Below are positions 11,868 to 59,100 of a stretch of DNA of 64,000 bases, one piece after another. A program made the translations under genes and the position numbers. Each line of letters starts with the position of its first letter. Position 1 is the first letter of the stretch. Below the pieces are notes generated by a model that saw only the letters and a list, made by a program, of their open reading frames with translations, made no database searches and had not been told where the DNA came from. Source of the stretch: Macrostomum lignano (taxonomy: Eukaryota); the NCBI GenBank assembly GCA_002269645.1, contig NIVC01001379.1, positions 186,001 through 250,000 of the forward strand, given 5' to 3'.

Positions 11868-11889
11868 TACTCCTGTGTGAGTGTGTACC

Positions 11890-12762: not shown

Positions 12763-14234
12763 TCAGTGTACCTGCGTACATATCTGCGCACTTGTATGCC
12801 TGCTTAGGGGAGTCGGTAGAATGGGCAGTAATGCCTCTTGCTGGTTGTGTGCCTATGTTACTTAAAGTGCGCCAGGGTGCACACAACCCCCTGCCTCTAA
12901 TAAATAATGGTTATTGCCATAAAATGCTAGACCTATGTTAACTATAGTACAAAAGCCAAATGTGTATAGTATAGGCCTATAAAAGAATATGGCAATCTTG
13001 TAGTTTGTTCTGCATGCCATAGCCATAGGGCTCAATTAATTGTAATTAGGCTATTTTTAACGTTGAATTTGAACAAAAGACTATCATCATATTAGAATAA
13101 TTAGATTAACTTGAAAACTTAATGAAAATCACTTCTTAGGGTGCATTGCATGTGCATGGTAGTATAGACTATAGTATGGTATGTCGACGTCCAATCCAAT
13201 AGACTATTTAAGAGCCTCTTTGAAGAGTTTATTTGGCGCAGTTTTGATTTGCCTTACTTATTTATTTACCCTCTTTAAAGTTTCTAAAGTTACTAATTTA
13301 ACATTAAGTCATTAAACCCTTTGATTGAAACATTAAAAAATTCAATACTCGTAAAAAGTAAGACCCTGAATAAAAATTAATTGACTTGCCTCTATTTGAA
13401 TATTACAAGACATAGTGAAACGTTAGAACAAAGTTTATCATTTTAAATTTATTACACTTGCATGATGAACTTGACGAAAGTGCAAACGGACAAAAAATAT
13501 TTCAACTTTAATTAATATAACAATTTATACTTCTTTTGCTTTGCTCCTAACTGTATTGTCTGACTCAACTCCGACATAGGCGACAACAATTCTAGAGCCA
13601 GAATCATCCCAGAAAAAAGCAGTACCAGGCGCAGCGGAGCCGAGAGGCAGGGTGGGATAATCTTGACTGTGACAGCTTCACACGACCCCCAATGTCCCCA
13701 AGCTTTCCCCGCCTGTTACATACATATGATCCCAATAATTTATCATTTCTCTCCACTGTGCCCCACCCTAATTTTTGTCCAATCACAACGCGGCTGGCGG
13801 TTGACGTCATTGGGGGGGGGGCGGTTGGATACGGAGGTCCAAAGGATAGGTCTTCAGCCCTCAACCCATCCCTCTAGAGCTATTAGGAGCCTGTTTTGAA
13901 TTGAGTCTGATCGGAAAATTTTTTACCTCCTTTATCCTTTACACTTTGCTTGCTGTTCTCTGCGCTTCGTTCGGTCCCTTGTGTCGTTGTTTTCTCTCGA
14001 GACTCAATTCACCTTCCCTGAGAAACTCAGCACCCGAATAACCGCGGGCAACTCTCAATTCCCACCTTTTCTCTGGGTGTGCTTTCACAAGTTTGAAATT
14101 TCGCAAGATCAAAATTTCTAGCAAAGATACTTCTTAAGCTCGAAAATTTCACAATTTCGAAATCTCACAACATCTAAAACTCATTTTTAGCCTGGTCTCC
14201 TCCCCCCATTGCTCACTATTTCCAAGCTAATATT

Positions 14235-14810
14235 CTGTCAACCTATTCCGCTTTAATAATACATGTAAACCGAACTGTTAAGGCCAATAGGAGGGCTAGC
14301 ATACAATTCAGGGCATAGCTATGTACATGCATGTATTCAACTCGTTCTGTTGACTTATTTATCATGAGTTGTGGTATGAAGTGAGTAGCTAGTGAGTGCG
14401 CGTGTCGCAGAGCATGGACTAGAAGCTGAGGATCAGAGTGGAAGATCACAGAGTAGGAACCGAATTTAACCAAATGATCATACTCGTAGCAGTAACAATA
14501 CTTCTAAAAATAAGTCTCGTAGGATGTGCACCATGAGAGAGCTCTGGGACCTGCACTTCCGGCCATCCCATATGCCGTATCAAACTTATCTACCCTGGGA
14601 TCCTGGGGCTTAGGTGCTGGGAATCGTAGTCTAAAACCGCTCACCAGCTAAAAGATCCCCCTATGCAAAAGTCCTCGTTTCCAGCAAAAAACTGGACTGT
14701 CCTTGTATGCCTACAGTCCCTTAATCGGCCATTTCAAGTAGTTGGGGTCAAGAACATTAGTCTGCTCCAGACCGGGAGTGTACTTCTACACAGTGACTGC
14801 ATGGTGGATC
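14235..14810 (-). repeat. unclassified dispersed repeat (second copy at 35230-35697 plus 42733-42890)
   Basis: The reverse complement matches the 35-kb copy, e.g. tttggttaaattcggtt...tcttccactctgatcctcagcttctagtccatgc.ctgcgacacgcgcact. Confidence 0.8.
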
Positions 14811-29800: not shown

Positions 29801-32800
29801 AATGTGCGCAATTTACCCACTAAACTGTATATATTATTCTCAACAGCCCGAGTCAATGAAGACCCTGTGCGTCACTTGACCAAAAATTAGAACAGGGCGG
29901 CAACGAGTAGTAAAGATCTTCGGGAATTTCCTTTAACGCTCACCGCGGAGCTTACCTGTTTATTGCTACCCGTAATTTTAATTTTAGTCAACATCTATGA
30001 ATAATCAGTTGGTACCGCGTGCTGAGGAATCAGTGAGGCGCAGCAATAGATATTCCAAGGAGTTGATCTCTCTTGCGAATAAACAAAGGTACAACTAAAG
30101 TGTCCAAGGCCAAAAGTAAAGTGCTAGCCTGCACGAGAGAAAGAGAGAGTGACAGTGACTGACAGACAGAGACAGAGACAGAGACAGAGACAGACAGAGG
30201 CGGTTTACAGAGATAGACAGACAGAGACAGTTTACAGGGGTAGACAGACAGACAGACGGAGAGAGTTGCAGCTGAGAGAGCTGAAACAGATGGAGCGCAT
30301 AGGGAGCTAACGAGGTAAATTAGAGAATAAAAAATTCCTAAAAATATTTTTACAATCCTAAATAAAACTTAAAAACTTTGCAAAACCCTAAAAATTGGGT
30401 GCACGACAATTGACTGCCACAATTTGACTGCCACAATTTGACTGCGGTCAATTTGACTGCCGAGAAATTTGACTGCCGACAAAATGACTGCGGACAATTT
30501 GACTGCCGAGCAATTTGACTGCCGACAAAATGACTGCCAACAATTTGACTGCGGTCAATTTGACTGCCGAGAAATTTGACTGCCGACAAAATGACTGCGG
30601 ACAATTTGACTGCCGAGAAATTTGACTGCCGACAAAATGACTGCGGACAAAATGACTGCCAACAATTTGACTGCGGTCAATTTGACTGCGGACAATTTGA
30701 CTGCCGAGCAATTTGACTGCCGACAAAATGACTGCGGACAAAATGACTGCCAACAATTTGACTGCCAACAATTTGACTGCCAACAAAATGACTGCCGACA
30801 AAATGACTGCCAACAATTTGACTGCGGTCAATTTGACTGCGGACAATTTGACTGCCGAGCAATTTGACTGCCGACAAAATGACTGCGGACAAAATGACTG
30901 CCAACAATTTGACTGCCAACAATTTGACTGCCAACAATTTGACTGCCAACAAAATGACTGCCGACAAAATGACTGCCAACAATTTGACTGCCAACAATTT
31001 GACTGCCAACAATTTGACTGCCAACTGCTGCCGACAAAATGACTGCCAACAATTTGACTGCCGACAATATGACTGCGGCAATTTGACTGCCGACAATATG
31101 ACTGCGGCAATTTGACTGCCAACAAAATGACTGCCGACAAAATGACTGCCAACAATTTGACTGCCGACAAAATGACTGCGGCAATTTGACTGCCGAAATT
31201 TGACTGCCGACAATATGACTGCGGCAATTTGACTGCCAGCAAAAAGACTGCGGCAATTTGACTGCCGAGCAATTTGACTGCCAGCAAAATGACTGCGGCA
31301 ATTTGACTGCCGACAAAATGACTGCCGAGCAATTTGACTGCCAGCGAAATGACTGCCGGAAAAATGATGCTCCCAAAGTTTAGCACTCTGTTTTTAAGTC
31401 TATGCATGTAGTGAAATATTGTATTTACGAGCTAGAATGATGCAGAACAGAACACATAACCTTTATACAAGCTGTAACGGCTGTTGAAACCCTCGGATTT
31501 TGAACAGTGGGAAATGGGAATTCTAATCTTAGGAACTATTTTGCATATATTCTAAAATCTGAGTTTAAACTCAAGCAAAAACTTTTATTATTAGTTAGGA
31601 ATTAGGATAGAGTTAAACATAACATAGATTACATTCGTGGAAAATAAGGATTGGAGGCAAACTATTGATATTGTTGGCTGGGGTGCGGCGCAGAATGTCA
31701 GAAAAACTCTGGCCTCTACCTCTGCCTCTCGATCCCTATGTCCCTTGCATCCTTTGAACCTTCTATCTTTCTTCTGTTTTCTCACTTCTCTCTCGTCTCT
31801 GCTCTCTCATCTCCCCTCTCTTATCTGTCATCGACTCATCTTACTCTTATACTCGCATGTTCTCTCACCTCTCTCCTGTGTACTCTTCTCTTCCCCTCTT
31901 TCCTTTCTCCTTTCTTCCCTTTTCTTTTCTTCTCTTCTATACTCTCTCCCTCTCTTGTCTTCTCTCATCTCTCATCTCTCCTTTCATCTCTCTCATTTCT
32001 ACTCTCTCATTGAGTCTCATCTCTCCTTTCATCTCCACTATCTCATCTCTACAATCTCACCTTTCCCCTGTCTTCTTTCTCAACTTCTCTCTCATCTCTC
32101 TCTCCTCTTTTGCATAACGAGAATGCGCCTAGCAAGCTTTTCAATTTCATTCGTCAATATAAAGCTGTGCACAACTAGGCTAAGCTTTTGGTTTTGGTGT
32201 TTGGGGTTGCCAACTTGGGGGTTTGGAGTCAAAAAATGAAAGTAGAGGGTGATCAGTGGAGCCCACAAGTTTAGGTGGCGAGCAAACTCATAAAACTCCA
32301 TTGTGAGAGAGAGAGGGGGGGTTTAAAGTGGCGAACATTGAGGGACTGGGGGAGAGAGGAGGAGGGGTGGCCTCTTGTTTTCTATATTAATTTTATGGGC
32401 TTATTATCGATTTACATGCATGTATATAGATATAGATTCACTAATTGTGACTTGGCATATCTGGTATGCCCTAGCATTGCCTACTAGTCTAGACTCTACT
32501 ATTAAGGTGATGATTTCCACATTTAAAGGTTCTTTCTTTCTCCTATGTCATATTAATCTCATATATTGGATGGAATCTTCCAGATTTAAAAGCAATACCA
32601 TAGACTCGTACTATACAATCTATTAGTAGCCTAATAGACTAATATTTAGTATATTTGGATTAATCAGTCAAAAGCTAAAGTTAATGGTAAGCTAGCTCTA
32701 TAAAGAGCACTCTGCTCAACAAACCACAGCTATGTATAGATGATCCGTTTGAACATTCGTCATAACACATGCATGTATTGCTGAAAGGCAAATGTAGCTT

Positions 32801-34520
32801 GCATCATTACTCGTAAAGAACGAATTTTTAGTCCTGCGTAAATATGATCAATACATATATAAAGAGGATGTACGTGTAGTATTTGAGGCAGTCATATTGC
32901 TCGGCAGTCATTTTGTTGGCAGTCATTTTGTCGGCAGTCTAATTGTTGGCAGTCATTTTGTCGGCAGTCAAATTGCCACAGTCATTTTATCGGCAGTCAA
33001 ATTGCTCGGCAGTCAAATTGCCGCAGTCTTTTTGCTGGCAGTCAAATTGCCGCAGTCATATTGTCGGCAGTCAAATTGCCGCAGTCATATTGTCGGCAGT
33101 CAAATTGTTGACAGTCATTTTGTCGGCAGTCATTTTGTTGGCAGTCAAATTGTTGGCAGTCATTTTGTCGGCAGTCATTTTGTTGGCAGTCAAATTGTCG
33201 GCAGTCAAATTGTTGGCAGTCATTTTGTCCGCAGTCATTTTGTCGGCAGTCAAATTGCTCGGCAGTCAAATTGTCCGCAGTCAAATTGTGGCAGTCAAAT
33301 TGTGGCAGTCAAATTGCCGCAGTCATATTGTCGGCAGTCAAATTGTTGGCAGTCATTTTGTCGGCAGTCATTTTGTTGGCAGTCAAATTGTTGGCAGTCA
33401 TTTTGTCCGCAGTCATTTTGTCGTCAGTCAAATTTCTCGGCAGTCAAATTGTCCGCAGTCAAATTGTGGCAGTCAAATTGTGGCAGTCAAATTGTTGGCA
33501 GTCAAATTGTTGGCAGTCAAATTGTCCGCAGTCAAATTGTCCGCAGTCAAATTGTGGCAGTCAATTGTCGTAGACCCCTAAAAATTACAACCCGAACACC
33601 CCAAGGGGTTACTGCTTTTGATAGAAGGCGGACCCAATGTTCATCTTCTGATATCTTGCCTAATAGTTCTGCTGCAACTTCCAACCCATACTCGTGCACT
33701 CGTGTACTGTCAGTCTGTCACCCTTTTGTTGACAAAATCGTAAAAATAGAGATTCTACAAAGTTTGAATAGAGCCAGCCGCCGTAAGCTGTTTCTAGACG
33801 AAAAAAGCCCACTTTCAGCTTTAAAATAGGCTCGTATAATAACAAGCGAGTCACATGAAAATACGATAATAAAAAAATATGCCCGTGTTTTTCTGCACAG
33901 TTTTGTTATTCTGCATCTTTTCTATAAAATGCCTGTTATGCCATTCGGGGTCACGTCTAGTTCTAGTCAGGACCACAGGGCTTGGGTGAGACACTAGGTG
34001 CTCGTTTATAATCGAGTTTTGACGAGTAGTTACGGCATAAACAGCACTCAAGATTTGATAAGGACGGGAACCGCGGATTGAAAGTTTGAGAGTAATATTT
34101 ACCACGATTTTCTTTCCCAGAAAACGCAGGAAATCAAAACTTTCAAAAAGTGTTTTTTCCACGTGAGTTTGAAGATTAAGAAAGAAGCTCCACAGCTTTT
34201 TGATTTTGCTCATTGCACTGTATTTGTGCAGTTTAAATAATAACGGGCTAGGAGAAGACTCGGTACCCGGTACTCAGTCACTCACCTGCGCTGCAACTGC
34301 AATGCTGGGAATCCGCTGAATAAAAAGATCTCAATAGAAGTAATATATTATAATTTTAAGCGTATTTATTAGTACGTTAAAACTGATTCAATTTGAATAA
34401 AAAAACGCAAGCGAAGTCCAATATAAATAAATAGCGACTTTATCTGGCCGCGGAGTCCAACTGAAGATTGTAATTGGCTGCCGTAACTGCTGCAATAGGC
34501 CTCTGTAGCTATGTACACAC
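26900..34520 (-). CDS. candidate unidentified multi-exon gene (small exons)
   Basis: Possible exons: ~34.52-34.44 kb (ECVHSYRGLLQQLRQPITIFSWTPRPDK); 34315-34286 (TTATTCAG|RIPSIAVAAQ|GTGAGT); 33714-33600 (TDSTRVHEYGLEVAAELLGKISEDEHWVRLLSKAVTPW); ~30.07-30.02 kb (EINSLEYLLLRLTDSSAR); ~27.77-27.58 kb; ~27.04-26.96 kb (TSPKDAARSRIAQAQAIILDYQNRLNR). The first four are phase-compatible, but some splice sites are weak and no family is recognised. Confidence 0.3.
27095..27385. repeat. near-perfect 15-bp minisatellite (gggatatcgggatct)n
   Basis: About 19 units, with one visible substitution at ~27225. Confidence 0.95.
27895..29612. repeat. 23-bp minisatellite with a variant gradient and higher-order blocks
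   Basis: aacttggcgcctcactttcctcc changes to aacttggcgcctcactgtcccat after ~28350. Confidence 0.9.
30397..33577. mobile_element. Mutator/Foldback-type element with minisatellite arms, 9-bp TSD
   Basis: CTAAAAATT|gggtgcacgacaattgactgccac ... gtggcagtcaattgtcgtagaccc|CTAAAAATT; arms 30404-31365 (aatttgactgccgac)n and 32885-33570 (inverted); non-coding CT-rich centre. Confidence 0.9.
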
Positions 34521-35229: not shown

Positions 35230-35697
35230 AGTCACCTGTGCAAGAGTATACACCCGGTAAAATCTCCCACTAACGAGACGGAACTCCCGGTCTGCAACAG
35301 TTCTTGACCCCACCTGTAACCTGTACTAGAAAGGGCCGATTAATGGGCTCTATGCGAGGCTTACAAGGACAGTCCAGTCAGTGCTGGAAACGATTCGACT
35401 TTTGCATGGGGGATCTTTGAGCTGGTGAGCAGTTTTAGACTACGATTCCCTCCTAAGCCCCGGGATTCCAAGTGTGGATAATAGATAACGCCATATTAAT
35501 ATCTTTCCTCCTAGATGGGTTCGATGCAGCAGGAGATGGGGAAGTGCAGGTCTCTGAGCTCAGAGCTGCACATCCTATGGGGACTTATTTAGAAGTATTG
35601 TTATACTGCTATGATCATTTGGTTAAATTCGGTTCATACTCGGTGATCTTCCACTCTGATCCTCAGCTTCTAGTCCATGCACTGCGACACGCGCACT
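35230..35697 (+). repeat. unclassified dispersed repeat, 5' part (continues at 42733-42890 after the insertion)
   Basis: Homologous to 14235-14810 on the opposite strand. Confidence 0.75.
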
Positions 35698-38600
35698 ACT
35701 ACGTATCGCGCCAAATCTGCAGGGTTTTCAGATGTTTTGACGCAAAAAACGCAAATTATACTACTATCTGAAAATGAAGTAAGTAGTATACAAAAACGCT
35801 ATCCTAAGCGTGATATGGCAATATGTAGTCGTAATAATCCATGTGCTCATATATGTACATTAATTCCATGTACATTAATCCCTAAATATCTCAAATTGGA
35901 TATGTACATTAATCCCATGTACATTAATCCCTATCTATCTCAAATTGGATATGTACATTAATTCCATGTACATTAATCCCTATCTCAAATGTCCATGTCT
36001 ATCCCCAATTCTATATGTACACTCACATTAATCTACAGTGTCATCCCCAGACGGCCCGCGCGCGCACCAAAATTACAACTCGAAACCCTACTACATGTAC
36101 AATCTCATCCAAATGAGTCAACATTCAAGTTTTACAAACCACGTTATATACATATTCCTATTTATATGTCAATTATTCAAAACCTACATGTAGCTGATTA
36201 CACTACTACCTTTAGTAGAGTTACAAATCAAGATTCTATTGAAAAAGACTGTATTCATATAGTTTTCACATTGGAAAAGCGTATATTTTCATTTCAATAA
36301 TTGAAAAAGAGAGCAAAAACAGTAAGGAGACAACAGCAAGTTGAGACTTAATTATAGCCTGTACTACCAAACCCTCCTGCACCGCGAATTGAGCGGCTGC
36401 TGGAAGCAACCTCCTCATCGCCATTCCCTCTAGTATATCCTCACCCCTCGAAGCCCCTATACTGAATGTTGAATCACCCTTTAACTCGGACCATAGTCAA
36501 ATTCAACCCTGTTCGAAAACAGCCACCACCCCTCCAGTTTACCAGACACAGCGCGAGCTATAATTTTAACACTCGCCCCTGCTCTCTGTCTGTCCCCCCC
36601 TTCTAAATGCCAAGGAATTTCGACCCTCTCTCCATTTTCAGTGTACAGACAGATCTTTCCTCAGCACAGACCATATATTAAACTTCAAAACCCCTCTCTT
36701 CTCCGATTACGTCATCCATGCCGCCCCAGTTAGCAAGAAACCAACTTTTAATGCACACATCAACCCCCGCGAGCAAATCCGAGTCCGCCAACCTCTACCT
36801 GCATTGACAAACCCCAGCTGCATTTGTAAATGTACACAGCCTATGAATCAGTGTCTCCACCGCATGCAATTCTGATTTACTTGATTCTAAACTTTGTAAA
36901 TTGTATAAGTCACCCTTGCGTTATACTAGAAGTAGTGAAGTCCACATATTTAAATACGTGAGGCTATTCAATTCTGCCTCTCCGCATCCCCTACCTTCTC
37001 ACTTCAAGCTTTCAGACTTGGTCTTTGAGACGGTCGGTTTAATCTGTTAGAAGCAGGAATGAATCATGCACTGACCTCTCCATACAAAGTAAAGTTGGAA
37101 TTTCAGACAAGAAATTTGGTTATTTTAAAAGCTAAATGACTAGAAAAGCACATTTTTTTCATTAAAATGCAGCTTTTACAGTTTTTTTACGATTTTAACC
37201 TTAAAATGCAGACTTTGTTGATCAAAATCAGTAGTTTCATCACTAGAAACCATACTTTCAACAGCTAATTTGTCCAAATGTCGCTTTCAACTTGACCTTA
37301 GACTGCTTTTAAGCAGGAATGAACCCCACACAAACATCCACAAGCCAGCCCAAAATCATCCAAAGACATGGCTATTGAAGCCTAAATTGCTAGAAATGCG
37401 CATTTTTTTCATAAGAAAATACAAATTTTCACAGTTTTTATGCATTTTTTACGTTAAAATGCAGACTTTATTGATCAAAATCAGTAGTTTCATCACTAGA
37501 AACCATACTTTCAGCAACTAATTTGTCCAAATATCGCTTTCAACTTGACCTTAGACAGCTTTTAAGCAGGAATAAACCCCCACGAACATACACAAGCTAG
37601 CCCAAAATCATCCAAAGACGGCTGTTGAAGACTAAATTGCTAGAAATGAGCATTTTTTCATAAGAAAACACAAATTTTCACAGTTTTTACGCATTTTTTT
37701 CGTTAAAATGCAGACTTTATTGATCAAAATCAGTAATTCATCACTAAAAACCACAATTTTAACACAAAATTATCACAAATGCTACTTCTGGAACTCTGAG
37801 ACAGCTTTGAGCAGGAATTATAATCGCACACGGATTACCCGAGCCAGTCCAATATTCCACTGAAGCCAGGGTTTTTTAAAGCTGAATTGTTAGAATTGCT
37901 CATTCTTTCGTTTAATAAATGACAATTTTCACAGTTTTATTATTTTCTAACGTTAAAATGCGAAATGTATTGGTCAAACTTAGTAGTTTCATCCCAAAAA
38001 GCCATAATTTCAACCGCTAATTTGTCCAAATGCTGATTTCAAAGTTGGCAAGAGACAGCTTTCGAGCAGGAATGAGTCACACACTGATCTCCATATGCAC
38101 ACCCGGCCCAAGTTGGAATTCCACCCAAGACATTTTCATTGAAAGCTAAATTACTAGAAATTGCACATTTTCGTTTTTAAAAGGTCAATTTTCACAGTTT
38201 TTACTCTTTTTAACGTTAAAATGCTGACTTTATTGAACAAAATTAATCACTTCATCAGCAGAAACCATAATTTTTACAACTTAATGCTGTTTCATCATTC
38301 AAATGTATGTATTTTGTACGTGTAATACCCCTCAAGAAGTCAGGGAAGGGATTATTCTTGAATATTGGGTTAAAACGTACAGTTTGCTATAAACCTAGCT
38401 ATAATAATTTTAACATATACAGTAGGCGAAGCGGCCCGTTGATTTCGATTGACATTTAAACTGTCCCTCCCAGACCTCTCTCTCTCTCTCCTTCTGCACC
38501 CACCGAGAAAAGTGACTCATGCGGCAATCAGTTTGACAGGTTTAGTATATTACTGAATTGGCAAAACAGCCAACACACAATGTTCATTAGACTCGTCTTC

Positions 38601-41600
38601 ACAGCACAGACCCATGTAGAACAGAACTGAGAGAATGAGGCTGCGTGACCACCCACCCCATTATCCTGTCTTTCCGTTGCATGGCAGCACGTAATTAAAT
38701 GTGTCAAGTGTACAATTGATTCAATCGATTACTCGTTTATACGCAAAGCATCGAGAGAGTTTTTAATTGCATCCAAACTTTCTGACTAATGCATTCGTGT
38801 GTTCCAAAGAAGGAGACACTGATTCATAGGGTGTGTACATTGACAAATGCAATTACAGCACGCAGGGTAGGGTTGGCTTTGGTGGACGCGCGGATTTGCT
38901 TGGTTCGCATTGTTCATATATGCGCATCGAAATTTTTTTCTTGCTAACTGCTTCTATGGGGATGTATAGATGGCGTAATCAGAGATAGGGCTTTGGTTGG
39001 GGGAGGCTGGGTCCGTGCTGTGAAAAGATCTGCTTGCTTCGTCAAAATGTACATTGGGATTGAGAGAGAGGCCGGTCGAATTTCGTTGACAACTAGAAAT
39101 GGAAAGGTTTGGTCAGAGAATAGGGGTGTATGTGTGTTTTGGCTTTATTCAAAATGGTCTGTGCTGCGAAGACGAGTCCATTGACCATTGGGTGTTTACT
39201 GTTTTGCCAATTCAGTATACTGAACCTGTTAAACTGATTGCCTCATGAGTCACTTTTCTGGGGTATGTGTAGGAGAGAGAGGCCTGAGAGAGACAAGGGC
39301 TCGATTTGGGTGGGTCTCTGGCCCCATTCGTATTGGCTAATTTGGCGAATTGGCAAATCTACTTGCATGGGTTAAATTATTGAATATGGTCAGAGTTGAA
39401 GAATTTGGAGGATGAATCAAGATGTAAAGTTGGCAAAAACAACACTGATTCACCACATCTAAAAGATGACTGCTAGGAGCTTCGGAAATAAGACTACTGT
39501 ACACAGCAGCATCAACAAAAGGTATTAAATTGTCAATCAAAATCGACCCGTAGATGTGCTATTTTGCATGGTTCACAGTGTTCATATGTGCATCGAAAAA
39601 TTTTGTTTCTTGCTAACTGCTTCTATGGGGGAGGTGGATGACGTAATCAAGATAGGGTTTTGGTTGGAGGAGGCTCAATATATGAGTCTGTGCTGTGAAA
39701 ATATCTGTTTGTACACTGAAACTGGAGAGGGAGGGTCGGAATTCCTTGACAGTTAGAAATGGTAAGGTCAGAGAGACAGGGACGAGTGGTTCTGTTCTAC
39801 ATGGGTCTGTGCTGTGAAGACGAGTCTAATGAACATTGTGTGTTGGCTGTTTTGCCAATTCAGTAATATACTAAACCTGTCAAACTGATTGCCGCATGAG
39901 TCACTTTTCTCGGTGGGTGCAGAAGGAGAGAGAGAGAGAGGTCTGGGAGGGACAGTTTAAATGTCAATCGAAATCAACGGGCCGCTTCGCCTACTGTATA
40001 TGTTAAAATTATTATAGCTAGGTTTATAGCAAACTGTACGTTTTAACCCAATATTCAAGAATAATCCCTTCCCTGACTTCTTGAGGGGTATTACACGTAC
40101 AAAATACATACATTTGAATGATGAAACAGCATTAAGTTGTAAAAATTATGGTTTCTGCTGATGAAGTGATTAATTTTGTTCAATAAAGTCAGCATTTTAA
40201 CGTTAAAAAGAGTAAAAACTGTGAAAATTGACCTTTTAAAAACGAAAATGTGCAATTTCTAGTAATTTAGCTTTCAATGAAAATGTCTTGGGTGGAATTC
40301 CAACTTGGGCCGGGGTGTGCATATGGAGATCAGTGTGTGACTCATTCCTGCTCGAAAGCTGTCTCTTGCCAACTTTGAAATCAGCATTTGGACAAATTAG
40401 CGGTTGAAATTATGGCTTTTTGGGATGAAACTACTAAGTTTGACCAATACATTTCGCATTTTAACGTTAGAAAATAATAAAACTGTGAAAATTGTCATTT
40501 ATTAAACGAAAGAATGAGCAATTCTAACAATTCAGCTTTAAAAAACCCTGGCTTCAGTGGAATATTGGACTGGCTCGGGTAATCCGTGTGCGATTATAAT
40601 TCCTGCTCAAAGCTGTCTCAGAGTTCCAGAAGTAGCATTTGTGATAATTTTGTGTTAAAATTGTGGTTTTTAGTGATGAATTACTGATTTTGATCAATAA
40701 AGTCTGCATTTTAACGAAAAAAATGCGTAAAAACTGTGAAAATTTGTGTTTTCTTATGAAAAAATGCTCATTTCTAGCAATTTAGTCTTCAACAGCCGTC
40801 TTTGGATGATTTTGGGCTAGCTTGTGTATGTTCGTGGGGGTTTATTCCTGCTTAAAAGCTGTCTAAGGTCAAGTTGAAAGCGATATTTGGACAAATTAGT
40901 TGCTGAAAGTATGGTTTCTAGTGATGAAACTACTGATTTTGATCAATAAAGTCTGCATTTTAACGTAAAAAATGCATAAAAACTGTGAAAATTTGTATTT
41001 TCTTATGAAAAAAATGCGCATTTCTAGCAATTTAGGCTTCAATAGCCATGTCTTTGGATGATTTTGGGCTGGCTTGTGGATGTTTGTGTGGGGTTCATTC
41101 CTGCTTAAAAGCAGTCTAAGGTCAAGTTGAAAGCGACATTTGGACAAATTAGCTGTTGAAAGTATGGTTTCTAGTGATGAAACTACTGATTTTGATCAAC
41201 AAAGTCTGCATTTTAAGGTTAAAATCGTAAAAAAACTGTAAAAGCTGCATTTTAATGAAAAAAATGTGCTTTTCTAGTCATTTAGCTTTTAAAATAACCA
41301 AATTTCTTGTCTGAAATTCCAACTTTACTTTGTATGGAGAGGTCAGTGCATGATTCATTCCTGCTTCTAACAGATTAAACCGACCGTCTCAAAGACCAAG
41401 TCTGAAAGCTTGAAGTGAGAAGGTAGGGGATGCGGAGAGGCAGAATTGAATAGCCTCACGTATTTAAATATGTGGACTTCACTACTTCTAGTATAACGCA
41501 AGGGTGACTTATACAATTTACAAAGTTTAGAATCAAGTAAATCAGAATTGCATGCGGTGGAGACACTGATTCATAGGCTGTGTACATTTACAAATGCAGC

Positions 41601-42732
41601 TGGGGTTTGTCAATGCAGGTAGAGGTTGGCGGACTCGGATTTGCTCGCGGGGGTTGATGTGTGCATTAAAAGTTGGTTTCTTGCTAACTGGGGCGGCATG
41701 GATGACGTAATCGGAGAAGAGAGGGGTTTTGAAGTTTAATATATGGTCTGTGCTGAGGAAAGATCTGTCTGTACACTGAAAATGGAGAGAGGGTCGAAAT
41801 TCCTTGGCATTTAGAAGGGGGGGACAGAGAGAACAGGGGCGAGTGTTAAAATTTAGCTCGATTTGTTATGGGGTCTGCGCTGTGTCTGGTAAACATCGGA
41901 GGGGTGGCTGTTTTCGAACAGGGTTGAATTTGACTATGGTCCGAGTTAAAGGGTGATTCAACATTCAGTATAGGGGCTTCGAGGGGTGAGGATATACTAG
42001 AGGGAATGGCGATGAGGAGGTTGCTTCCAGCAGCCGCTCAATTCGCGGTGCAGGAGGGTTTGGTAGTACAGGCTATAATTAAGTCTCAACTTGCTGTTGT
42101 CTCCTTACTGTTTTTGCTCTCTTTTTCAATTATTGAAATGAAAATATACGCTTTTCCAATGTGAAAACTATATGAATACAGTCTTTTTCAATAGAATCTT
42201 GATTTGTAACTCTACTAAAGGTAGTAGTGTAATCAGCTACATGTAGGTTTTGAATAATTGACATATAAATAGGAATATGTATATAACGTGGTTTGTAAAA
42301 CTTGAATGTTGACTCATTTGGATGAGATTGTACATGTAGTAGGGTTTCGAGTTGTAATTTTGGTGCGCGCGCGGGCCGTCTGGGGATGACACTGTAGATT
42401 AATGTGAGTGTACATATAGAATTGGGGATAGACATGGACATTTGAGATAGGGATTAATGTACATGGAATTAATGTACATATCCAATTTGAGATAGATAGG
42501 GATTAATGTACATGGGATTAATGTACATATCCAATTTGAGATATTTAGGGATTAATGTACATGGAATTAATGTACATATATGAGCACATGGATTATTACG
42601 ACTACATATTGCCATATCACGCTTAGGATAGCGTTTTTGTATACTACTTACTTCATTTTCAGATAGTAGTATAATTTGCGTTTTTTGCGTCTAAACATCT
42701 GAAAACCCTGCAGATTTGGCGCGATACGTAGT
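35698..42732. mobile_element. 7.0-kb non-coding giant-TIR (foldback) element with 6-bp TSD
   Basis: Arms 35698-38627 and 39789-42732 are near-identical inverted copies (identical ORFs 35989..36300/42130..42441 and 37270..37521/40896..41147). Termini ACTACGTATCGCGCC...GGCGCGATACGTAGT; CGCACT directly on both sides. The empty site is preserved in the 14.4-kb paralogous repeat. Confidence 0.9.
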
Positions 42733-43214
42733 CGCACTCACTACTCACATTTCATGTCACGTCTCATATTAAATAAATAAACAGACAGAAACAAACGAGT
42801 TGAATTATAGCTAATGCTCTGAAATACTGGCCCTAAACCTGGCCTTAACCTCTCGGTTAATTATTAAAACGGAATTAGTAAGTTAAGATTGATAAACTAG
42901 GAGATGCAGATGATCAAGGGGGACCGGGGCTGACTATACCCAACGCCAGCCCAGCGCAACAGATAAAGAAATACCTTACAGACGCGACCGACGGGCAGGG
43001 CTGCTTGGCGCGGTGGTCGTCGGTAGTCACGGCGGGCGGTTGCAGTCACGGACGATTAGTCCAGACGAGGCGCGTCGGGAGGTTAAAGCCAAGGGAAGTT
43101 ACAGCTCAGCACGGTGGTTACAGCTCAGCGCCGAAAAGGGTGAAGGGGCTCCAAACGGTTTTTGCAGCTCCAAAGGGTCCGTACAGAAGGGGAAGAGGAA
43201 GGAAGCGGGAAGAG

Positions 43215-43575
43215 GGAAATGCTTGCCCCTTTGAGCTCAAAACAGCTCCCATGGAACGGTAGGCAGTCCAGGCAAGCCCGGCACGCAGAGCACGACGGTC
43301 TTCTGCGTGTTGACCACCAGGCCGACGCTCGCCACAACGCTTAACAGCCGGTCCAGCTGGCGCTATGCTCCCTCGACGGTCAAGAACAGCAGGGCGAGAT
43401 CGTCGGCGTAGCCATGCAAGCACGCTGAGACGCCTCTTCGGTTGGCGTCGACCCACGCGTCGCTACAGCAGGAAGCCGTCGTCTTTAGAAGGGAGATCAT
43501 CACCCAGTCAAGCACCAGAACGAACAGGAACGGCGCAGGCGTGACGACCTGCTGGATCCCGTTTGCCGCTGCAGG
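43215..43575 (-). mobile_element. degenerate non-LTR retrotransposon (RTE-like) reverse transcriptase fragment
   Basis: Translates, with frameshifts and a stop, as GIQQVVTPAPFLFVLVLDWVM...YADDLALL...RQLDRLLSVVASVGLVVNTQKTVVL, then RAGLAWTAYRSM. Confidence 0.85.
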
Positions 43576-46123
43576 TAGACAGCCGCCTGCTCAGACAGCA
43601 CAAAATTTTATATAAAATGAGAAAATTTAGGCAGCCGCAACTTACTATACAGTATTCACTGTTAATAATACCCTCGAACTATACGATATACGCACTGAAC
43701 TATATACGCAAGTAACAATTGATGTAAGAACTCAAAACACAAATTAAAACAATAAAAATCCTGCCTTACATGCGTGCCTCAAAAGCATCAATCGAATTAT
43801 CATATTTTGAATACACCATGTATACGAGCTACTTCGATAGATTACGAGCTGGTATAAAATTGTATCTAGAGCACAAAATATATTCTGTGATCTAGAGCCC
43901 GATGAAACAGTGTTCGATGCCAAAAAAGCAACATAAAATTGACGCAAAACGAAGCAAAAATAATAGATCGACTTATCGAGTCAGTCGAATTAATTAGTAA
44001 AATTTTAAATAGACATACTTTTCAGAAAAAATAACTAGCTATAACAAACGCATAGATTGACAAGTGCTTGACTAAAGTGAAGAGAAACAAAAAAATTGGA
44101 CAAATTATGGCTGTCCAACTTTCGGGAATTTTTTCTCCTTCGGAGCAAATGACTGCATGCATTGTTCACCCCGGACGAAAAGTCAATGCGAATTGATTGT
44201 AACACATGGCGAGTATACATGTACGATTGACTAACTTGAATTAGCTGCGGGGGCTCCGTGCCTCCGGAAACAGCAAGGAGGCGTTGCCGCCCATTTCGCT
44301 AACCCCTGGTGACCACGGGCAGCTGGTGCTGCGGTGTAGCGCAGGGAGTTCCGGTGGTGCCGGTGTCTGCAGCGCGGTCCCCCTCCGGAGAGTCCAGGAG
44401 GTGGATTGTCGCTCGCCCGGTAGCCCTTAGGTAGCGGACGAGCTGGCAGAGATTCTCGGGCCTGAAAACGTCGGAGAGGTCCGGGTTTGGGCCGTGGTAG
44501 GTGAGCCTGACCTGAGTAAAGGCGGGCATTCACAGATAAAGTGCTCCGCATTCTCGACACCGGAGAGGCAGAATGGGCAATCCTCGCTGCGCATTTTTCC
44601 CTGGAGGTGACGATGCCTGGCAAAACAGCCATGACCCGAGAGGGCCATGGTCACCGCCCTGATGTCCCTGCGGTTGAGTCCAAGCAGGGCCCTGCGCAGG
44701 GCGGAGGAAGCTAGACAGGGGGCAGCCGCGCGCCCCAGTGAAAAAAATGATATGGATTCCATGTGGATTTTTCATATGAAATCCATATGTGCATTTGTCT
44801 CCGTCCATCCATGTGGAATCAAGATATGGATTCCACATGGAAGATCCATATGGAAGTAATTATGTATTTCACATAGAATCCACATTGTCATTGAATAAGC
44901 AGCCATTATACTGGTTGCCATAATAAATTGTTGCATCCTAAATCTCAAAATAATACCAGATCTCAAAATTTCATACGAACCCCAGATCTCAATACCATAT
45001 AAAAGAAACTGAAACACAGATAAAACACTAGCTATAGCCAAAAATATTTCTGCACAAAAATTCAAAATTCAAAATTCAATATTCAAAAACGATGTAAGGT
45101 GTATTTATGTACAGTAGTGAGTCACTGGCACACAAAGAATAAACACACTGATGTAAATATTGATATCTTTAGAGTTGCACTGCGCATATGATATAATATA
45201 TAATTTGAAATTGACATTGTCAATAGCATTAATTAACAATAATATAATGCATCAGAATTAGAACAGTCAGAAACATGCTGCTGCCAATTGCCAGAATGCT
45301 GCTTCTTCAGGTCAGGTGAGCAACCTTAGAAAAGAAAGGGGTTAAATTACAGAATTTTATAACAGATTGATGACAGATTTTGTAATAGATTTTGATAGAT
45401 TTTGATGACAGAAAAAAATAAGTTTATAACTAAAACTTACCATTGCTTCACAAAAGGTAGCATTTGAGATATTAAATTCAAATTCCAAGTAGCTTTGCAA
45501 GCTTCTTCAAATGCAAGACCAAGGTGACATCCAAGTTTGAGGATGGGTCATGTAATGTTAGGCTGAAATGAAATAGAAAAATAATTGTTGCCAATTAAGA
45601 TTGATAAATAATATTTATATAATTCATAAAACTAATTTAATGATGAATACTTATAAAATAAAATAAAGTTTATTTTAAAATTAACTAGGCCTAAGTCCTA
45701 GGTTTATTTTTTAAGCGCAAAGTGTGCATATGCACCCTAAATTTAAAAATTGCACCTTGAAAATTGAAATTAAAAAGTTGATGATACAGTTTAGGTGTGA
45801 TCTCATTACCTATTTTTCTGTTGAAGCCTTTTTTGCACTGCCTTTATATAAGAAAAAAGAGAAACTGCATTTTAAGCCTTAAAATTATAAAACCCTAAAA
45901 GTGAGCATAGGGTATGATTTTGCACCTTGTCTCTAGCAAAAAAGAAAACCCTACCCAAGTCAATCAATAAAATTAAATTAATAAAATTAAAATAATAAGT
46001 ACAAAAAATTAATATATGTTTCTATAAATTTAATTTTTTATTTTAAAATTGATTTTAGACTATAAAGTATTTAGGCAAAGCAATGCATGTTTTTTTATAT
46101 TTGCGGGCCTATTATGATTAAAA

Positions 46124-46483
46124 GGGGGGCTGTAGCCAAGCGGTAGCACAGCTGCTCTGGTGTGCCAGCGACCTAGGCTCGATTCTAAGTGCAGTCACAT
46201 TAATTTGGGGCTGAATTGGAATCTTGGCTTGGCTCTCTGCTTGTGCAATTAATGGCCTTGAGAGCCAACCCCCAAGGCACAGTGAAGTATACATGCCTAA
46301 CAATAAATAAAGTTAGGGCCACTGTACACTCCTATGTAAATGTGCCTGCATACGTATCCGCACGCTTGTGTGCCTGCTCAAGGGAGTTAATGGAATGGGC
46401 AGCAATGCCTCTCGCCAGTTGTATGCCTATGTCGCTTAACGTGTGCCAGGGTGCACACAACCCCCTGCCTCTAATAAAAAAAA
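46124..46483 (+). mobile_element. full-length SINE family 1
   Basis: A-box TAGCCAAGCGG, B-box GGCTCGATTC, AATAAA/A tail, TSD ta(t/g)tatgattaaa. Confidence 0.85.
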
Positions 46484-47037
46484 TAGTATGATTAAACATT
46501 AGGCCTAATCTTAAAAGCTATGCCCTATAGCTATTAAATTCTAGACTTGGCCTAAATCAGATCAAATTTACAATAATCATTATTTATTTATAATAGCAAC
46601 CTTAGGGATCTGCTAGGCTAGCTATGCCAAAAGCAGGTTGCAAGTGTAATTGCAAAGAATTATTTATAATGATTAATAATATTGTTTTTAAAAATGCAAC
46701 AAGTCTAAAAGACGCTAACAGGCTTTTTTGAAGAAAATCATAAATGAATAGAGTTTTAACAGATTAACTAGATTGACTAGTCACAATTCACAAAGTCAAG
46801 CTAGTCTTAACCTTAATTAAAATAGAAGGACCTAAATTGATAGTTATAGGCCTAGGCCTAGCTTAAAATAGGCCTAATAAGCATACATAAATAGATAAGA
46901 CTAATAGGTAGGACTAAGAGGAAATTATGAACTTCTAAAGGACTATTTAAGTTTAAAAAATGAGTAGCCAATCTATGGACATGGCCATGGGATTCCTAGA
47001 AATTGGATAAGCCTAAATAAATTTATCATGGATGGAT

Positions 47038-49775: not shown

Positions 49776-54847
<5,072 letters not shown>

Positions 54848-54884
54848 GTTGTGAATTGGCAGATTCTATTGAGAGTTGCGCTTG

Positions 54885-55505
54885 ACAGTTTATTGACAGT
54901 GTACATGTACATCTAGGTCATTGACAGTGTACATGTACATCTAGGTCATTGGCAGTTTACATGTACATCTAGGTCATTGACAGTGTACATGTACGTGTAG
55001 GTCATTGACAGTGTACATGTACATGTAGGTCGTTGACAGTGTACATGTACGTGTAGGTCATTGACAGTGTACATGTACATATAGGTCATGACAGTGTACA
55101 TGTACATGTAGGTCATTGACAGTTTACATGTACGTGTAGGTCATTGACAGTTTACATGTACATGTAGGTCATGACATTGTACATGTTCATGTAGGTCATT
55201 TACAGTTTACATGTACGTGTAGGTCATTGACAGTTTACATGTACGTGTAGGTCATTGACAGTTTACATGTCAATGTAGGTCATTGACAGTTTACATGTAC
55301 GTGTAGGTCATTTACAGTTTACATGTACGTGTAGGTCATTGACAGTTTACATGTACATGTAGGTCATGACATTGTACATGTTCATGTAGGTCATTTACAG
55401 TTTACATGTCAATGTAGGTCATTGACAGTTTACATGTACGTGTAGGTCATTGACAGTTTACATGTCAATGTAGGTTATTGGCAGTGTAAATATAGGTCAT
55501 TGATG
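54885..55505. repeat. ~28-bp minisatellite in GIT intron 5
   Basis: (tgacagtttacatgtacgtgtaggtcat)n. Confidence 0.9.
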
Positions 55506-56174
55506 ACACTTGCCAGTGCTAGTTCTTTGCAGCGTGGATCCTTCTAAATATACTAAATCCTATATACTAAAAATGAGTTGTCTGTATGTATGTATGTATA
55601 TGGGTATGCGATTGATTTCAGAAAAAACGGCTCAACCGATTTTCTTCAAACTTGCATCATTCGATCAGAAATTTTCCTGGCACAGTACATGCATCTTGGC
55701 TAAGAAATTGCTCAATGTTAAAGGGATTAAATATTCGAAAAACACGCTTTTTTGCAAAGGTCAAGCCAAATTTTCGACTTGAAATGCATTGTAAGAATGC
55801 TAGAGAAAAAACTGACTGACTGAATTTCAATTCTGATAAAGATTGCATCACAACAAGTTGAAAACAGTGCCGAAGAAATGCACACACGACTTGATTGAAA
55901 TTGCGTAACCATATTGCTAACTCGAAGTGAGACTGATACTGGCTGACTGAGAAATTGATTATGTCATAACTTTTTACTCCAATTGACTTGCTGTAAGAAT
56001 TGAATTATAAGGGCCACAATTCATGTTCTCCAATTGAAAAGAGATAGCCCTGATGCGAACAGACTGGAATGCTAATGTAGCGACCTGGGTTCGAATCTTA
56101 GAAGCGCAAAATAATTTTTTTATTAAAACACCTTAAAAACAAAAAAACTGCTAAACATAAAAAAAGCGCAATAG

Positions 56175-59100
56175 AAGAGCCACCATGTCAAACCTAAAGG
56201 AGCCACCATGTCGAACATTAAAGAACCACCATGTCGAACATAAAAGAGCCACCATATCGAACATAAAAGAGTTACCATGTTAAAAATTAAAGAGCCACCA
56301 TGTCGAACATTAAAGAGCCACCATGTCGAACATAGAAGAGCCACCATGTCAAACATTAAAGAGCCACCATTTCAAACCTAAAGGAGCCACCATGTCGAAA
56401 ATTAAAGAGCCACCATGTCGAACATAAAAGAGCCACCATATCAAACATAAAAGAGTTACCATGTCAAACATTAAAGAGCCACCATGTCGAACATTAAAGA
56501 GCAACCATGTCGAACATTCAATAGCCACCATGTCAAACATTAAAGAGCCACATTGTCAAGCATTAAAGACCCACCATTTCAAACCTAAAATAGTTACCAT
56601 GTCAAACATTCAATAGCCACCATGTCAAACATTAAAGAGCCACCATGTCGAACATAAAAGAGCCACCATATTAAACATAAAAGAGTTACCATGTCAAACA
56701 TTAAAGAGCCACCATGTCGAACATTAAAGAGCCACCATGTCAAACATTAAAGAGCCACATTGTCAAGCATTAAAGACCCACCATTTCAAACCTAAAAGAG
56801 CCACCATGTCAAACATTAAAGAGCCACCATGTCGAACATTAAAGAGCCACCTTGTCAAATATTAAAGAGCCACCATTTCAAACCTAAAGAAGCCACCATG
56901 TCGAACATACAAGAGCCACCATGTCGAACATAGAAAAGCCACCATGTCAAACATTAAAGAGCCACCGTTTCAAACCTAAAAGAGCCACCATGTTAAAAAT
57001 TAAAGAGCCACCATGTCAAACATAAAACAGACACCATTAAGAACATTAAAGAGCCACCATGTCAAACCTAAAACAGCCACCATTTCGAAAATTAAGGAGC
57101 CACCATTTCGAAAATTTAAGAGCCGCTATGTTAAACATTAAAGGGCCACCTTGTCAAATATTAAAGAGCCACCATTTCAAACCTAAAGAAGCCACCATGT
57201 CGAACATACAAGAGCCACCATGTCGAACATAAAAGAGCCACCATATCAAACATAAAAGAGTTACCATGTCAAACATTAAAGAGCCACCATGTCAAACATT
57301 AAAGAGCCACCATGTCGAACATAAAAGAGCCACCATATCAAACATAAAAGAGTTACCATGTCAAACATTAAAGAGCCACCATGTCGAACATTAAAGAGCC
57401 ACCATGTCAAACATTAAAGAGCCACATTGTCAAGCATTAAAGACCCACCATTTCAAACCTAAAAGAGCCACCATGTCGAACATTAAAGAGCCACCTTGTC
57501 AAATATTAAAGAGCCACCATTTCAAACCTAAAGAAGCCACCATGTCGAACATACAAGAGCCACCATGTCGAACATAAAAGAGCCACCATATCAAACATAA
57601 AAGAGTTACCATGTTAAAAATTAAAGAGCCACCATGTCGAACATAAAAGAGCAACCATGTCAAACATAAAACAGACACCATTAAGAACATTAAAGAGCCA
57701 CCATGTCGAACATTAAAGAGCCACCATGTCAAATATAAAACAGCCACCATTTCGAAAATTTAAGAGCCGCCATGTTAAACATTAAAGGGCCACCTTGTCA
57801 AATATTAAAGAGCCACCATTTCAAACCTAAAAGAGCGACCCTGTCGAACATACAAGAGCCACAATGTCGAACATAAAAGAGCAGCTATGTAGAACATAAA
57901 AGAGCCACCATGTCAAACATAAAAAAGCCACCATGTCAAACATAAAAGAGCCAACATGAAGAACATTAAAGAGCCACCATGTCGACCATTAAAAGAGCCA
58001 CCATGTCGAACATACAAGAGCCACCATGTCGAACATAGAAAAGCCACCATGTCGAACATAGAAAAGCCACCATGTTAAACATTAAAGAGCCAATATTTCA
58101 AACCTTAAGGAGCCACCATGTCGAACATAAAAGAGTCACCATGTTAAAAATAAAGAGCCACCATGTCGAACATTAAAGAGCCACCATGTCGAACATTAAA
58201 GAGCCACCATGTCAAACATAAAACAGACACCATGTCAAACATTAAAGAGCCACCGGTTCAAACCTAAAAGAGCCACCATGTCGAACATTAAAGAGCCACC
58301 TTGTCAAATATTAAAGAGCCACCATTTCAAACCTAAAGGAGCCACCATGTCGAACATTAAAAAGCCACCATGTCGAACATTAAAAAGCCAACATGTCAAA
58401 CATAAAAGAGCCACCATGTCAAACCTAAAAAAGCCACCATGTCAAACATAGAAGAGCCACCATGTCAAACATAATAGAGCCACCATGTCAAACATTAAAG
58501 AGCCACCATGTCAAACATAGAAGAGCCACTATGTCAAACATAAAAGAGCCACCATGTCGAACATAAAAGAGTCACCATGTTAAAAATTAAAGAGCCACCA
58601 TGTCGAACATTAAAGAGCCACCATGTCGAACATTAAAGAGCCACCATGTCGAACATTAAAGAGCCACCATATCAAACATAAAAGAGTTACCATGTCAAAC
58701 ATTAAAGAGCCACCATGTCGAACATTAAAGAGCCACCATATCAAACATAAAACAGACACCATGTCAAACATTAAAGAGCCACCATGTCGAACATTAAAGA
58801 GCCACCATGTCAAACATAAAACAGCCACCATTTCGAAAATTAAGGAGCCACCATTTCGAAAATTAAAGAGCCGCCATGTTAACCATTAAAGGGCCACCAT
58901 GTCAAACATTAAAGAGCCACCATGTCGAACATTAAAGAGCCACCATGTCAAACATAAAACAGCCACCATTTCGAAAATTAAGGAGCCACCATTTCGAAAA
59001 TTAAAGAGCCGCCATGTTAACCATTAAAGGGCCACCATGTCAAACATTAAAGAGCCACCATGTCGAACATAAAAGAGCCACCATGTCGAACATTAAAGAG

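What the first reader, a model, noticed from the sequence alone, without database searches (positions are those of the whole stretch)
35698..42732. 7-kb non-coding element made almost entirely of ~2.9-kb inverted repeats, with an exact 6-bp TSD and an in-window empty site
Seen: arms 35698-38627 and 39789-42732 are near-identical inverted copies around a 1.16-kb spacer. The termini are ACTACGTATCGCGCC, and CGCACT flanks both ends. The host repeat has an uninterrupted copy at 14.2-14.8 kb reading GACACG-CGCACT-CACTA with a single CGCACT, so this is a real insertion with a 6-bp duplication. Established: long foldback TIRs normally go with 7-11-bp TSDs (FB, Galileo, MULE), whereas 6-bp TSDs with long TIRs typify Mavericks/Polintons, whose ends usually begin AG. 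Inference: either a gutted Maverick/Polinton-like derivative with atypical ACT ends or an undescribed giant-foldback family mobilised in trans. Near-identity of the arms implies recent insertion or ongoing arm conversion.
Basis: partly seen in the sequence, partly recalled or inferred. Interest (0 to 1): 0.8.

Follow-up and report, generated by a model that had tools for sequence, protein, structure and literature searches.

The report
Non-coding foldback transposon, 6-bp duplication
This is a real 7-kb insertion of a gene-less mobile DNA element in an animal genome, built as two almost identical 2.9-kb inverted arms; it resembles the well-known "foldback" transposons, but its 6-bp target duplication points to a different, still unidentified enzyme family.

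Summary
The arms are 35698-38627 and 39789-42732 (2930 and 2944 nt, 2 substitutions and 7 small indels). Both ends read ACTACGTATCGCGCC. CGCACT flanks both ends, and a diverged paralogue of the host repeat (site 14395-14400, minus strand) reads straight through one CGCACT. It is therefore a real insertion with a 6-bp target-site duplication, not an assembly palindrome.

The element is non-coding. Its longest stop-to-stop frame is 107 aa, against 100±19 in shuffles, and none of 20 segments hit Pfam. Its layout is the classic foldback plan:
- a unique end;
- a subterminal 49-bp array carrying six copies of a 15-nt word per arm;
- five ~250-bp tandem units;
- an inner domain;
- a 1.16-kb middle domain made partly of arm-like modules.

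The middle domain runs without a break into the right arm only, so the arms grew by inverted duplication of one end.

The superfamily cannot be assigned from one copy. A 6-bp duplication fits Maverick/Polinton or IS3EU/GingerRoot-type integrases. The ends fit IS3EU not at all, and Maverick only loosely. No relative was found in any collection I could search.

A classical foldback with a 9-bp duplication lies 2 kb upstream.

Verdict: a new variant of a known kind, of moderate interest.

The parts
35692..35697 (.). left copy of the 6-bp target-site duplication CGCACT
   Evidence: single copy at the paralogous site
35698..38627 (+). left arm of the inverted repeat (2930 nt)
35698..35712 (+). terminal 15-mer ACTACGTATCGCGCC; its mirror copy is at 42718-42732 (-)
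   Evidence: only two matches in the window, 0.02 expected
35851..35985 (+). subterminal 49-bp tandem array (2.8 units) carrying six copies of the 15-nt word ATGTACATTAATCCC (four exact, two with one mismatch), 154-283 nt from the end. Candidate protein-binding sites. Mirror array at 42445-42579.
   Evidence: 12 matches in the window, all in the two arms; 0.14 expected
36523..36588 (+). patch holding 7 of the 9 differences between the arms (six indels, one substitution); partner 41829-41907
37125..38281 (+). internal array of five tandem units of about 250 bp (63-95% alike); mirror array at about 40135-41297
38628..39788 (.). middle domain (1161 nt), non-coding; 652 nt of it resemble other parts of the element
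38895..39281 (+). module copy M1 in the middle domain, 76% identical to M2
39563..39934 (+). module copy M2. It runs uninterrupted across the middle-domain/right-arm boundary (39788/39789). The mirror boundary on the left (38627/38628) cuts the module.
   Evidence: (D12-D14, I22-I23)
39789..42732 (-). right arm of the inverted repeat (2944 nt)
42733..42738 (.). right copy of the 6-bp target-site duplication CGCACT
35283..35691 (+). left part of the interspersed host repeat that was interrupted
42739..42900 (+). right part of the interrupted host repeat
   Evidence: z = 15
14200..14779 (-). uninterrupted paralogue of the host repeat, with a single CGCACT at 14395-14400

Best explanation
It is a non-autonomous DNA transposon of foldback architecture, inserted into an older interspersed repeat of an animal genome.

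Shown:
- a 7035-bp gene-less segment lies between two copies of a 6-bp target sequence that is single in a paralogous site;
- it has perfect inverted ends;
- it has a subterminal array of a repeated 15-nt word in each arm;
- it has internal ~250-bp tandem repeats;
- it has a non-coding middle domain.

Inferred:
1. It was integrated by an enzyme supplied in trans by another element. That enzyme is a DDE-type transposase or integrase that cuts the target with a 6-bp stagger, recognises the ACTACG... ends, and probably binds the repeated 15-nt words.
2. The 2.9-kb arms are not an original design. One end, together with its adjoining sequence, was copied in inverted orientation over the other end. 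This is inferred because the middle domain is continuous with the right arm, while the left arm/middle junction breaks a repeated module.
3. The arms have since been kept alike by recency or by arm-to-arm conversion. One 66-bp patch escaped, or was overwritten from another copy.

The duplication length places the enzyme nearest the retroviral-integrase-like group (Maverick/Polinton, IS3EU/GingerRoot). It does not fit the Mutator or P groups that move the known foldbacks. The superfamily itself remains unassigned.
For: Insertion and 6-bp duplication.

Non-coding: longest frame 107 aa against 100±19 in shuffles; 20 segments, no credible Pfam hit; no Rfam match.

Foldback plan (end domain, tandem repeats, inner domain, middle domain). 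It matches the scheme described for foldback elements in PMC4079207.

Long arms occur specifically in gene-less copies, and arms grow by 'duplicated and inverted' internal sequence. Both are documented for Galileo (PMC3573991).

One-sided continuity of the middle domain: (D12-D14).

Clustering of arm differences.

Duplication length as a superfamily clue: PMC4079207, PMC10045372.

Foreign to the rest of the window: no other fragment of the element in 64 kb.
Against: - Only one copy is available, so the 6-bp length rests on a single event. Superfamilies show some spread in duplication length (IS256/MuDR 4-10 bp, PMC10045372).
- No coding partner was found in the window or elsewhere.
- The AC..GT ends match none of the 6-bp families' usual ends that I could read: IS3EU/GingerRoot TA..TA, Ginger2 TGTNR.
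- Arms of 2.9 kb are more than twice the longest Galileo arms reported (1.26 kb).
- Binding of a protein to the 15-nt words is inferred from their position and repetition only.
Confidence: 0.55

Rival explanations
1. It is a gene-less derivative of a Maverick/Polinton-like (virus-like) element. A linear protein-primed replicon lost its interior. One end was copied back in inverted orientation during strand-displacement replication (a snap-back or panhandle-type defective molecule). The product was integrated by the family's retroviral-type integrase supplied in trans, which gave the 6-bp duplication.
For: - The 6-bp duplication is a hallmark of Mavericks (PMC8097293, PMC8969392).
- Long inverted ends are typical: up to 1447 bp in vertebrates (PMC8097293) and about 2 kb in butterflies (bioRxiv 10.1101/2025.02.07.637071).
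- An AC-type end motif exists in Mavericks (PMC8097293).
- The end here, ACTACG, is an imperfect period-3 repeat, loosely like the (AGT)2 or (AC)3 repeats used for jumping-back.
- The one-sided continuity of the middle domain is what a single template switch would leave.
- Near-perfect arms follow directly from such an origin.
Against: - No trace of any Maverick gene in the element or the window.
- 7 kb is far below the 12.7-24.6 kb of intact vertebrate Mavericks (PMC8097293).
- The end repeat is imperfect (ACT/ACG).
- Subterminal arrays of a short word plus internal tandem repeats are the signature of cut-and-paste foldbacks (PMC4079207, PMC3573991).
- I found no described gene-less Maverick of this form in the papers I could read.
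- The terminal and subterminal words are absent from the viral contig collection.
Confidence: 0.25
2. A smaller element with short inverted ends inserted here, and the long arms arose afterwards in place. This could have happened by fold-back repair or by conversion of one side by the other. The 7-kb form would then never have moved as such.
For: The duplication and ends only require that the outermost bases were present at insertion. One arm boundary cuts a module. Arm identity of 99.9% fits a very recent local event.
Against: It needs two events where one suffices. The clustered 66-bp patch of differences suggests exchange with a diverged copy, not a single clean local duplication. Nothing in the flanks shows collateral rearrangement.
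Confidence: 0.12
3. It is an assembly artefact: a chimeric fold-back read, or a hairpin, assembled as a palindrome.
For: Long near-perfect palindromes are a known product of chimeric long reads. No read data could be inspected.
Against: An artefactual palindrome would return into the same flank. Here the two flanks are the two different halves of one host repeat, and they join exactly at a duplicated 6-mer. The centre is a 1.16-kb asymmetric domain, not a turn-around point. The arms also differ by a 17-bp indel and other changes.
Confidence: 0.03
4. It is a host hairpin-RNA locus, a long inverted repeat kept for small-RNA production, and not primarily a mobile element.
For: A transcript across it would form a 2.9-kb double-stranded stem.
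Against: The insertion signature (ends plus duplication plus a read-through paralogue) shows a mobile origin. There is no expression evidence, and the element has no similarity to any gene in the window that it could target.
Confidence: 0.05

Closest known systems
Foldback-type transposons of the Mutator lineage (Drosophila FB, Tetris of D. virilis, Tm1 of root-knot nematodes)
   Same: Gene-less. The arms are built as end domain + tandem repeats + inner domain, around a non-coding middle domain. The tandem repeats are about 220-250 bp (PMC4079207).
   Different: Duplication of 8-10 bp in Tetris against 6 bp here (PMC4079207). The arms here are much longer and nearly perfect. The ends are unrelated to the GGG-type ends of the 9-bp foldback in this window.
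Galileo two-TIR copies (P superfamily, Drosophila)
   Same: The longest arms occur in copies without a transposase gene. The arms are lengthened by internal tandem repeats and by internal sequence that was 'duplicated and inverted'. The repeats are thought to add binding sites (PMC3573991, PMC4079207).
   Different: 7-bp duplication. Arms of at most about 1.26 kb at about 95% identity (PMC3573991), against 2.93 kb at 99.9% here.
Maverick/Polinton virus-like elements
   Same: 6-bp duplication, long inverted ends, and an AC-type end variant is known (PMC8097293).
   Different: Those are 12.7-24.6 kb with 8 core genes. Their end motifs are perfect short tandem repeats, and their ends reach at most 1.4-2 kb. 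Here there are no genes, 7 kb in total, an imperfect ACTACG end and 2.9-kb arms.
IS3EU/GingerRoot DNA transposons
   Same: 6-bp duplication, inverted ends, and non-autonomous members exist (PMC10045372).
   Different: Their ends are TA..TA (occasionally TG..CA). Here they are AC..GT.
The neighbouring foldback in this window (30397-33577)
   Same: Same genome. Inverted arms made of tandem repeats around a middle domain, with an exact flanking duplication.
   Different: 9-bp duplication (CTAAAAATT), GGGT... ends, and arms that are plain 15-bp minisatellite arrays. It belongs to a different family, probably Mutator/FB-type.

Membership tests
Foldback-structured transposons (a structural class, not a superfamily) | Long inverted arms containing internal tandem repeats | tested here: met
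   49-bp and ~250-bp arrays in each 2.9-kb arm
Foldback-structured transposons (a structural class, not a superfamily) | Non-coding middle domain, no transposase gene | tested here: met
Foldback-structured transposons (a structural class, not a superfamily) | Flanking target-site duplication | tested here: met
   (6 bp)
Mutator/FB superfamily | Duplication of about 8-10 bp (PMC4079207) | tested here: not met
   6 bp. The 9 bases on either side do not match.
P superfamily (Galileo) | 7-bp duplication (PMC3573991) | tested here: not met
   6 bp
Maverick/Polinton | 6-bp duplication (PMC8097293) | tested here: met
Maverick/Polinton | Terminal inverted repeats | tested here: met
   but 2.9 kb against 46-1447 bp reported in vertebrates
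Maverick/Polinton | End motif of perfect short tandem repeats: (AGT)2, (AG)3 or (AC)3A (PMC8097293) | tested here: inconclusive
   The end is ACTACG: it starts with AC and has period 3, but the repeat is imperfect.
Maverick/Polinton | Protein-primed polymerase B, retroviral-type integrase, capsid, ATPase and protease genes | tested here: not met
   No frame longer than chance and no Pfam hit. A gene-less derivative would not carry them, so this excludes only an autonomous member.
Maverick/Polinton | Longer copies with the same ends that carry the core genes | not testable with these tools
   The source genome is not in any searchable collection.
IS3EU/GingerRoot | 6-bp duplication (PMC10045372) | tested here: met
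IS3EU/GingerRoot | TA..TA (rarely TG..CA) termini (PMC10045372) | tested here: not met
   AC..GT. Shifting the boundary to a TA destroys the direct repeat.
Dada | No terminal inverted repeats; insertion inside tRNA or snRNA genes (PMC3706591) | tested here: not met
   2.9-kb inverted ends. No tRNA or Rfam family at the target.
Ginger2/TDD | TGTNR ends and an AT-rich RTATAY target (PMC2836005) | tested here: not met
   The ends are ACTAC and the target is CGCACT.

The most novel reading that the evidence does not exclude
The element is a gene-less 'mini-Maverick'. It would be a snap-back defective genome of a protein-primed, virus-like element, consisting only of one end duplicated in inverted orientation, yet still integrated by the family's integrase. 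This would show that Maverick/Polinton-type elements spawn parasitic ends-only derivatives, much as cut-and-paste transposons spawn foldbacks and MITEs.
Probability: 0.2. Interest if true: 0.6.

Novelty: new variant of a known kind. Interest (0 to 1): 0.38.

Why it matters
[quoted passage not shown] So far it has been tied mainly to the Mutator and P superfamilies, which make 7-10-bp duplications.

A clean foldback with a 6-bp duplication and 2.9-kb arms would add a further lineage. That lineage would probably be served by a retroviral-integrase-like enzyme. If the enzyme is the Maverick integrase, it would show that virus-like self-synthesising elements also have ends-only parasites.

Long perfect palindromes are also fragile sites and sources of inversions, so copies of such a family can matter for genome stability and for assembly quality in this species.

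On present evidence it is a well-delimited single example, not a new principle.

Tried and rejected
1. Looking for relatives.
- The terminal 20- and 22-mers and a double 15-nt word were absent from viral, metagenome and prokaryote genome contigs.
- BLAST of arm plus middle domain against phage and plasmid records gave no match.
- An exact look-up of the 103-aa arm frame found nothing on record.
- A full-text search for the end sequences returned only chance primer matches.

2. Identifying the organism.
- A LicD-type exon found no homologue.
- A GIT-like exon found only a 47%-identical flatworm protein.
- The source genome and its close relatives are therefore not in the protein collection. For that reason I ran no further search on an arm-derived frame.

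3. Coding remnants. Twenty stop-free segments of the element gave no credible Pfam hit. Other window frames gave no transposase, integrase or polymerase.

4. Alternative boundaries (CACTA-type ends, TA..TA ends, a 9-bp duplication). All were rejected, because any shift breaks either the inverted ends or the direct repeat.

5. A head-to-head dimer of two complete elements. Rejected: the terminal 15-mer is absent from the inner ends of the arms.

6. The Kapitonov & Jurka 2006 paper is not held. The Maverick end motifs are therefore cited from PMC8097293.
Full report
**Observation**

The window carries a 7035-bp segment (35698-42732) whose outer 2930 and 2944 nt are inverted copies of each other. 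A global alignment of the arms finds 2 substitutions and 7 indel events, 26 nt in all.

The outermost 15 nt, ACTACGTATCGCGCC, occur only at the two ends, even when 2 mismatches are allowed; 0.02 matches are expected by chance. CGCACT directly abuts both ends, at 35692-35697 and 42733-42738. Neither the inverted ends nor the direct repeat can be extended by one base.

**Is it an insertion?**

The sequence left of the element (35283-35697) matches the minus strand of 14395-14779 at 75-87% identity. The sequence right of it (42739-42900) matches the adjoining 14200-14394 with z = 15 against shuffles. In a three-way alignment the 14-kb copy runs straight through one CGCACT, at 14395-14400.

The element therefore split a copy of an interspersed repeat of about 580 bp and duplicated 6 bp of it. 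The comparison site is a paralogue, not an allele. It fixes the boundaries but says nothing about polymorphism.

An assembly palindrome is very unlikely, for three reasons:
- the two flanks are different halves of one repeat;
- the centre is asymmetric;
- the arms differ by, among other things, a 17-bp indel.

**Anatomy**

Each arm has, from the outside in:
- about 150 nt of unique end;
- a 49-bp tandem array of 2.8 units (35851-35985 and 42445-42579), holding six copies of the 15-nt word ATGTACATTAATCCC (four exact, two with one mismatch). All 12 matches in the window lie in these two arrays, against 0.14 expected;
- about 1.1 kb of unique sequence;
- five tandem units of about 250 bp (37125-38281 and mirror);
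- an inner domain.

The 1161-nt middle domain (38628-39788) is not foreign cargo, since 652 nt of it resemble other parts of the element.

A module of about 390 bp occurs twice in direct orientation: M1 at 38895-39281 and M2 at 39563-39934, 76% identical. M2 crosses the middle-domain/right-arm boundary intact. The mirror boundary at 38627/38628 cuts the module. So the right arm plus the middle domain is the original continuous sequence, and the left arm is an inverted copy laid over the other end.

Seven of the nine arm differences fall in 66 bp (36523-36588). This is far from a random scatter. It suggests patchy conversion, or a short tract copied from a diverged relative.

**Coding capacity**

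The longest stop-to-stop frame in arm plus middle domain is 107 aa. Shuffled sequence gives 100±19. Twenty of the longest segments give no credible Pfam hit. There is no Rfam family and no tRNA.

The rest of the window has no transposase, integrase or polymerase frames, and no other fragment of the element. The element is non-autonomous, and its helper is not in view.

**Context**

The window is from an animal:
- a LicD-family exon;
- a GIT-like exon whose best hit is a flatworm protein at 47% identity;
- very dense minisatellites;
- weak reverse-transcriptase debris.

The organism could not be named. Neither its genes nor the element's ends are in any collection I could search.

**Mechanism**

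The layout is the foldback plan as drawn for Drosophila foldbacks: end domain, tandem repeats, inner domain, non-coding middle (PMC4079207).

In Galileo, the longest arms occur in gene-less copies. They arise by expansion of internal tandem repeats and by internal sequence that is duplicated and inverted. The internal repeats are thought to add transposase-binding sites (PMC3573991, PMC4079207). All of this matches what is seen here.

I therefore read the element as a foldback-type non-autonomous transposon. It would be integrated in trans by a DDE-type enzyme that recognises the ACTACG ends and probably the 15-nt words. The binding is an inference.

**What differs**

The duplication length is the difference: 6 bp, against 7 bp in Galileo, 8-10 bp in Tetris, and 9 bp in a second foldback only 2 kb upstream in this window. 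That second element spans 30397-33577, has arms made of a 15-bp minisatellite, and is flanked by CTAAAAATT on both sides.

Families reported to make 6-bp duplications:
- Maverick/Polinton (PMC8097293);
- IS3EU/GingerRoot, with ends TA..TA, not met here (PMC10045372);
- Dada, which has no inverted ends and targets small-RNA genes, neither met here (PMC3706591);
- Ginger2, which targets a 6-bp AT-rich RTATAY sequence and has ends TGTNR, neither met here (PMC2836005).

**Maverick reading**

It remains open. In its favour:
- the duplication length;
- long inverted ends, up to about 2 kb in butterflies (bioRxiv 10.1101/2025.02.07.637071);
- a known AC-type end motif (PMC8097293);
- the one-sided continuity of the middle domain, which is what a single template switch during strand-displacement replication would leave.

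Against it:
- no gene remnant;
- a size of 7 kb, against 12.7-24.6 kb for intact vertebrate Mavericks;
- an imperfect end repeat;
- subterminal word arrays, which are typical of cut-and-paste elements.

I put it at about 0.25, against 0.55 for a cut-and-paste foldback of unassigned superfamily.

**Verdict**

It is a new variant of a known kind: foldback architecture with a 6-bp duplication and unusually long, nearly perfect arms. One copy cannot carry a stronger claim. A census of the source genome would settle the family.

Noticed in passing
window 30397-33577 (duplications at 30388-30396 and 33578-33586): A second, classical foldback-like element. Its inverted arms are arrays of a 15-bp minisatellite (30404-31342 and 32887-33570) around a middle domain of about 1.5 kb. 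The ends read GGGTGCACGAC / GGGTCTACGAC (reverse complement), with an exact 9-bp flanking duplication CTAAAAATT. This is the Mutator/FB-type length.
   Followed up: partly
window 35283-35697 + 42739-42900, and 14200-14779 (-): The interrupted host sequence is itself an interspersed repeat of about 580 bp. Two copies lie in the window, 75-87% identical. Its class is unknown, and no tRNA or Rfam head was found.
   Followed up: partly
window 36523-36588 / 41829-41907: Seven of the nine differences between the arms, including a 17-bp indel, sit in one 66-bp patch. Possible causes are a short conversion tract from a diverged copy, a complex mutation, or a local consensus error.
   Followed up: partly
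window 18385-19988 (-): Exons of a LicD-family (fukutin-like) gene. Pfam LicD scores E = 2.5e-9 on 19527-19988. The neighbouring exon 18385-18828 has no homologue in the large protein collection.
   Followed up: partly
window 54404-54913 (+): An exon resembling the ARF-GAP GIT family, with a poly-glutamine run. The only database hit is a Macrostomum lignano protein with a GIT Spa2-homology domain, at 47% identity.
   Followed up: partly
window 2190-2564 (-) and 7135-7866 (-): Two frames starting with methionine share a conserved N-terminal stretch (…FECTIS..MLI…KIV.QL.G.L.EV..P…). They are probably first exons of two paralogous genes. No Pfam family was found.
   Followed up: no
window 11631-12041, 12603-12938, 46204-46488 (+): Three loci translate to similar peptides (…EWAVMPLAGCVPM…GAHNPLPLI…). 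This is another interspersed repeat family, with no Pfam match.
   Followed up: no
window 43366-43590 (-) and 44430-44771 (-): Degraded retroelement debris next to the insertion. One fragment has a YADD-type motif and a sub-threshold RVT_1 match (E = 0.08). A cysteine-rich frame resembles LINE C-termini; that resemblance is from my own recall and has no Pfam hit.
   Followed up: partly
window 55660-56004 / 60200-60583 (-), with arrays 56171-59369 and 60753-61251: A direct duplication of a block of about 350 bp. Each copy is followed by an array of a related 23-bp unit, the first with 139 units.
   Followed up: no
whole window: Very high minisatellite load: 37 TRF rows at score 100 or above, with units of 11-36 bp and arrays up to 3.2 kb. 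Related units of about 29-30 bp occur at 17640-17788 and 62616-63753.
   Followed up: no
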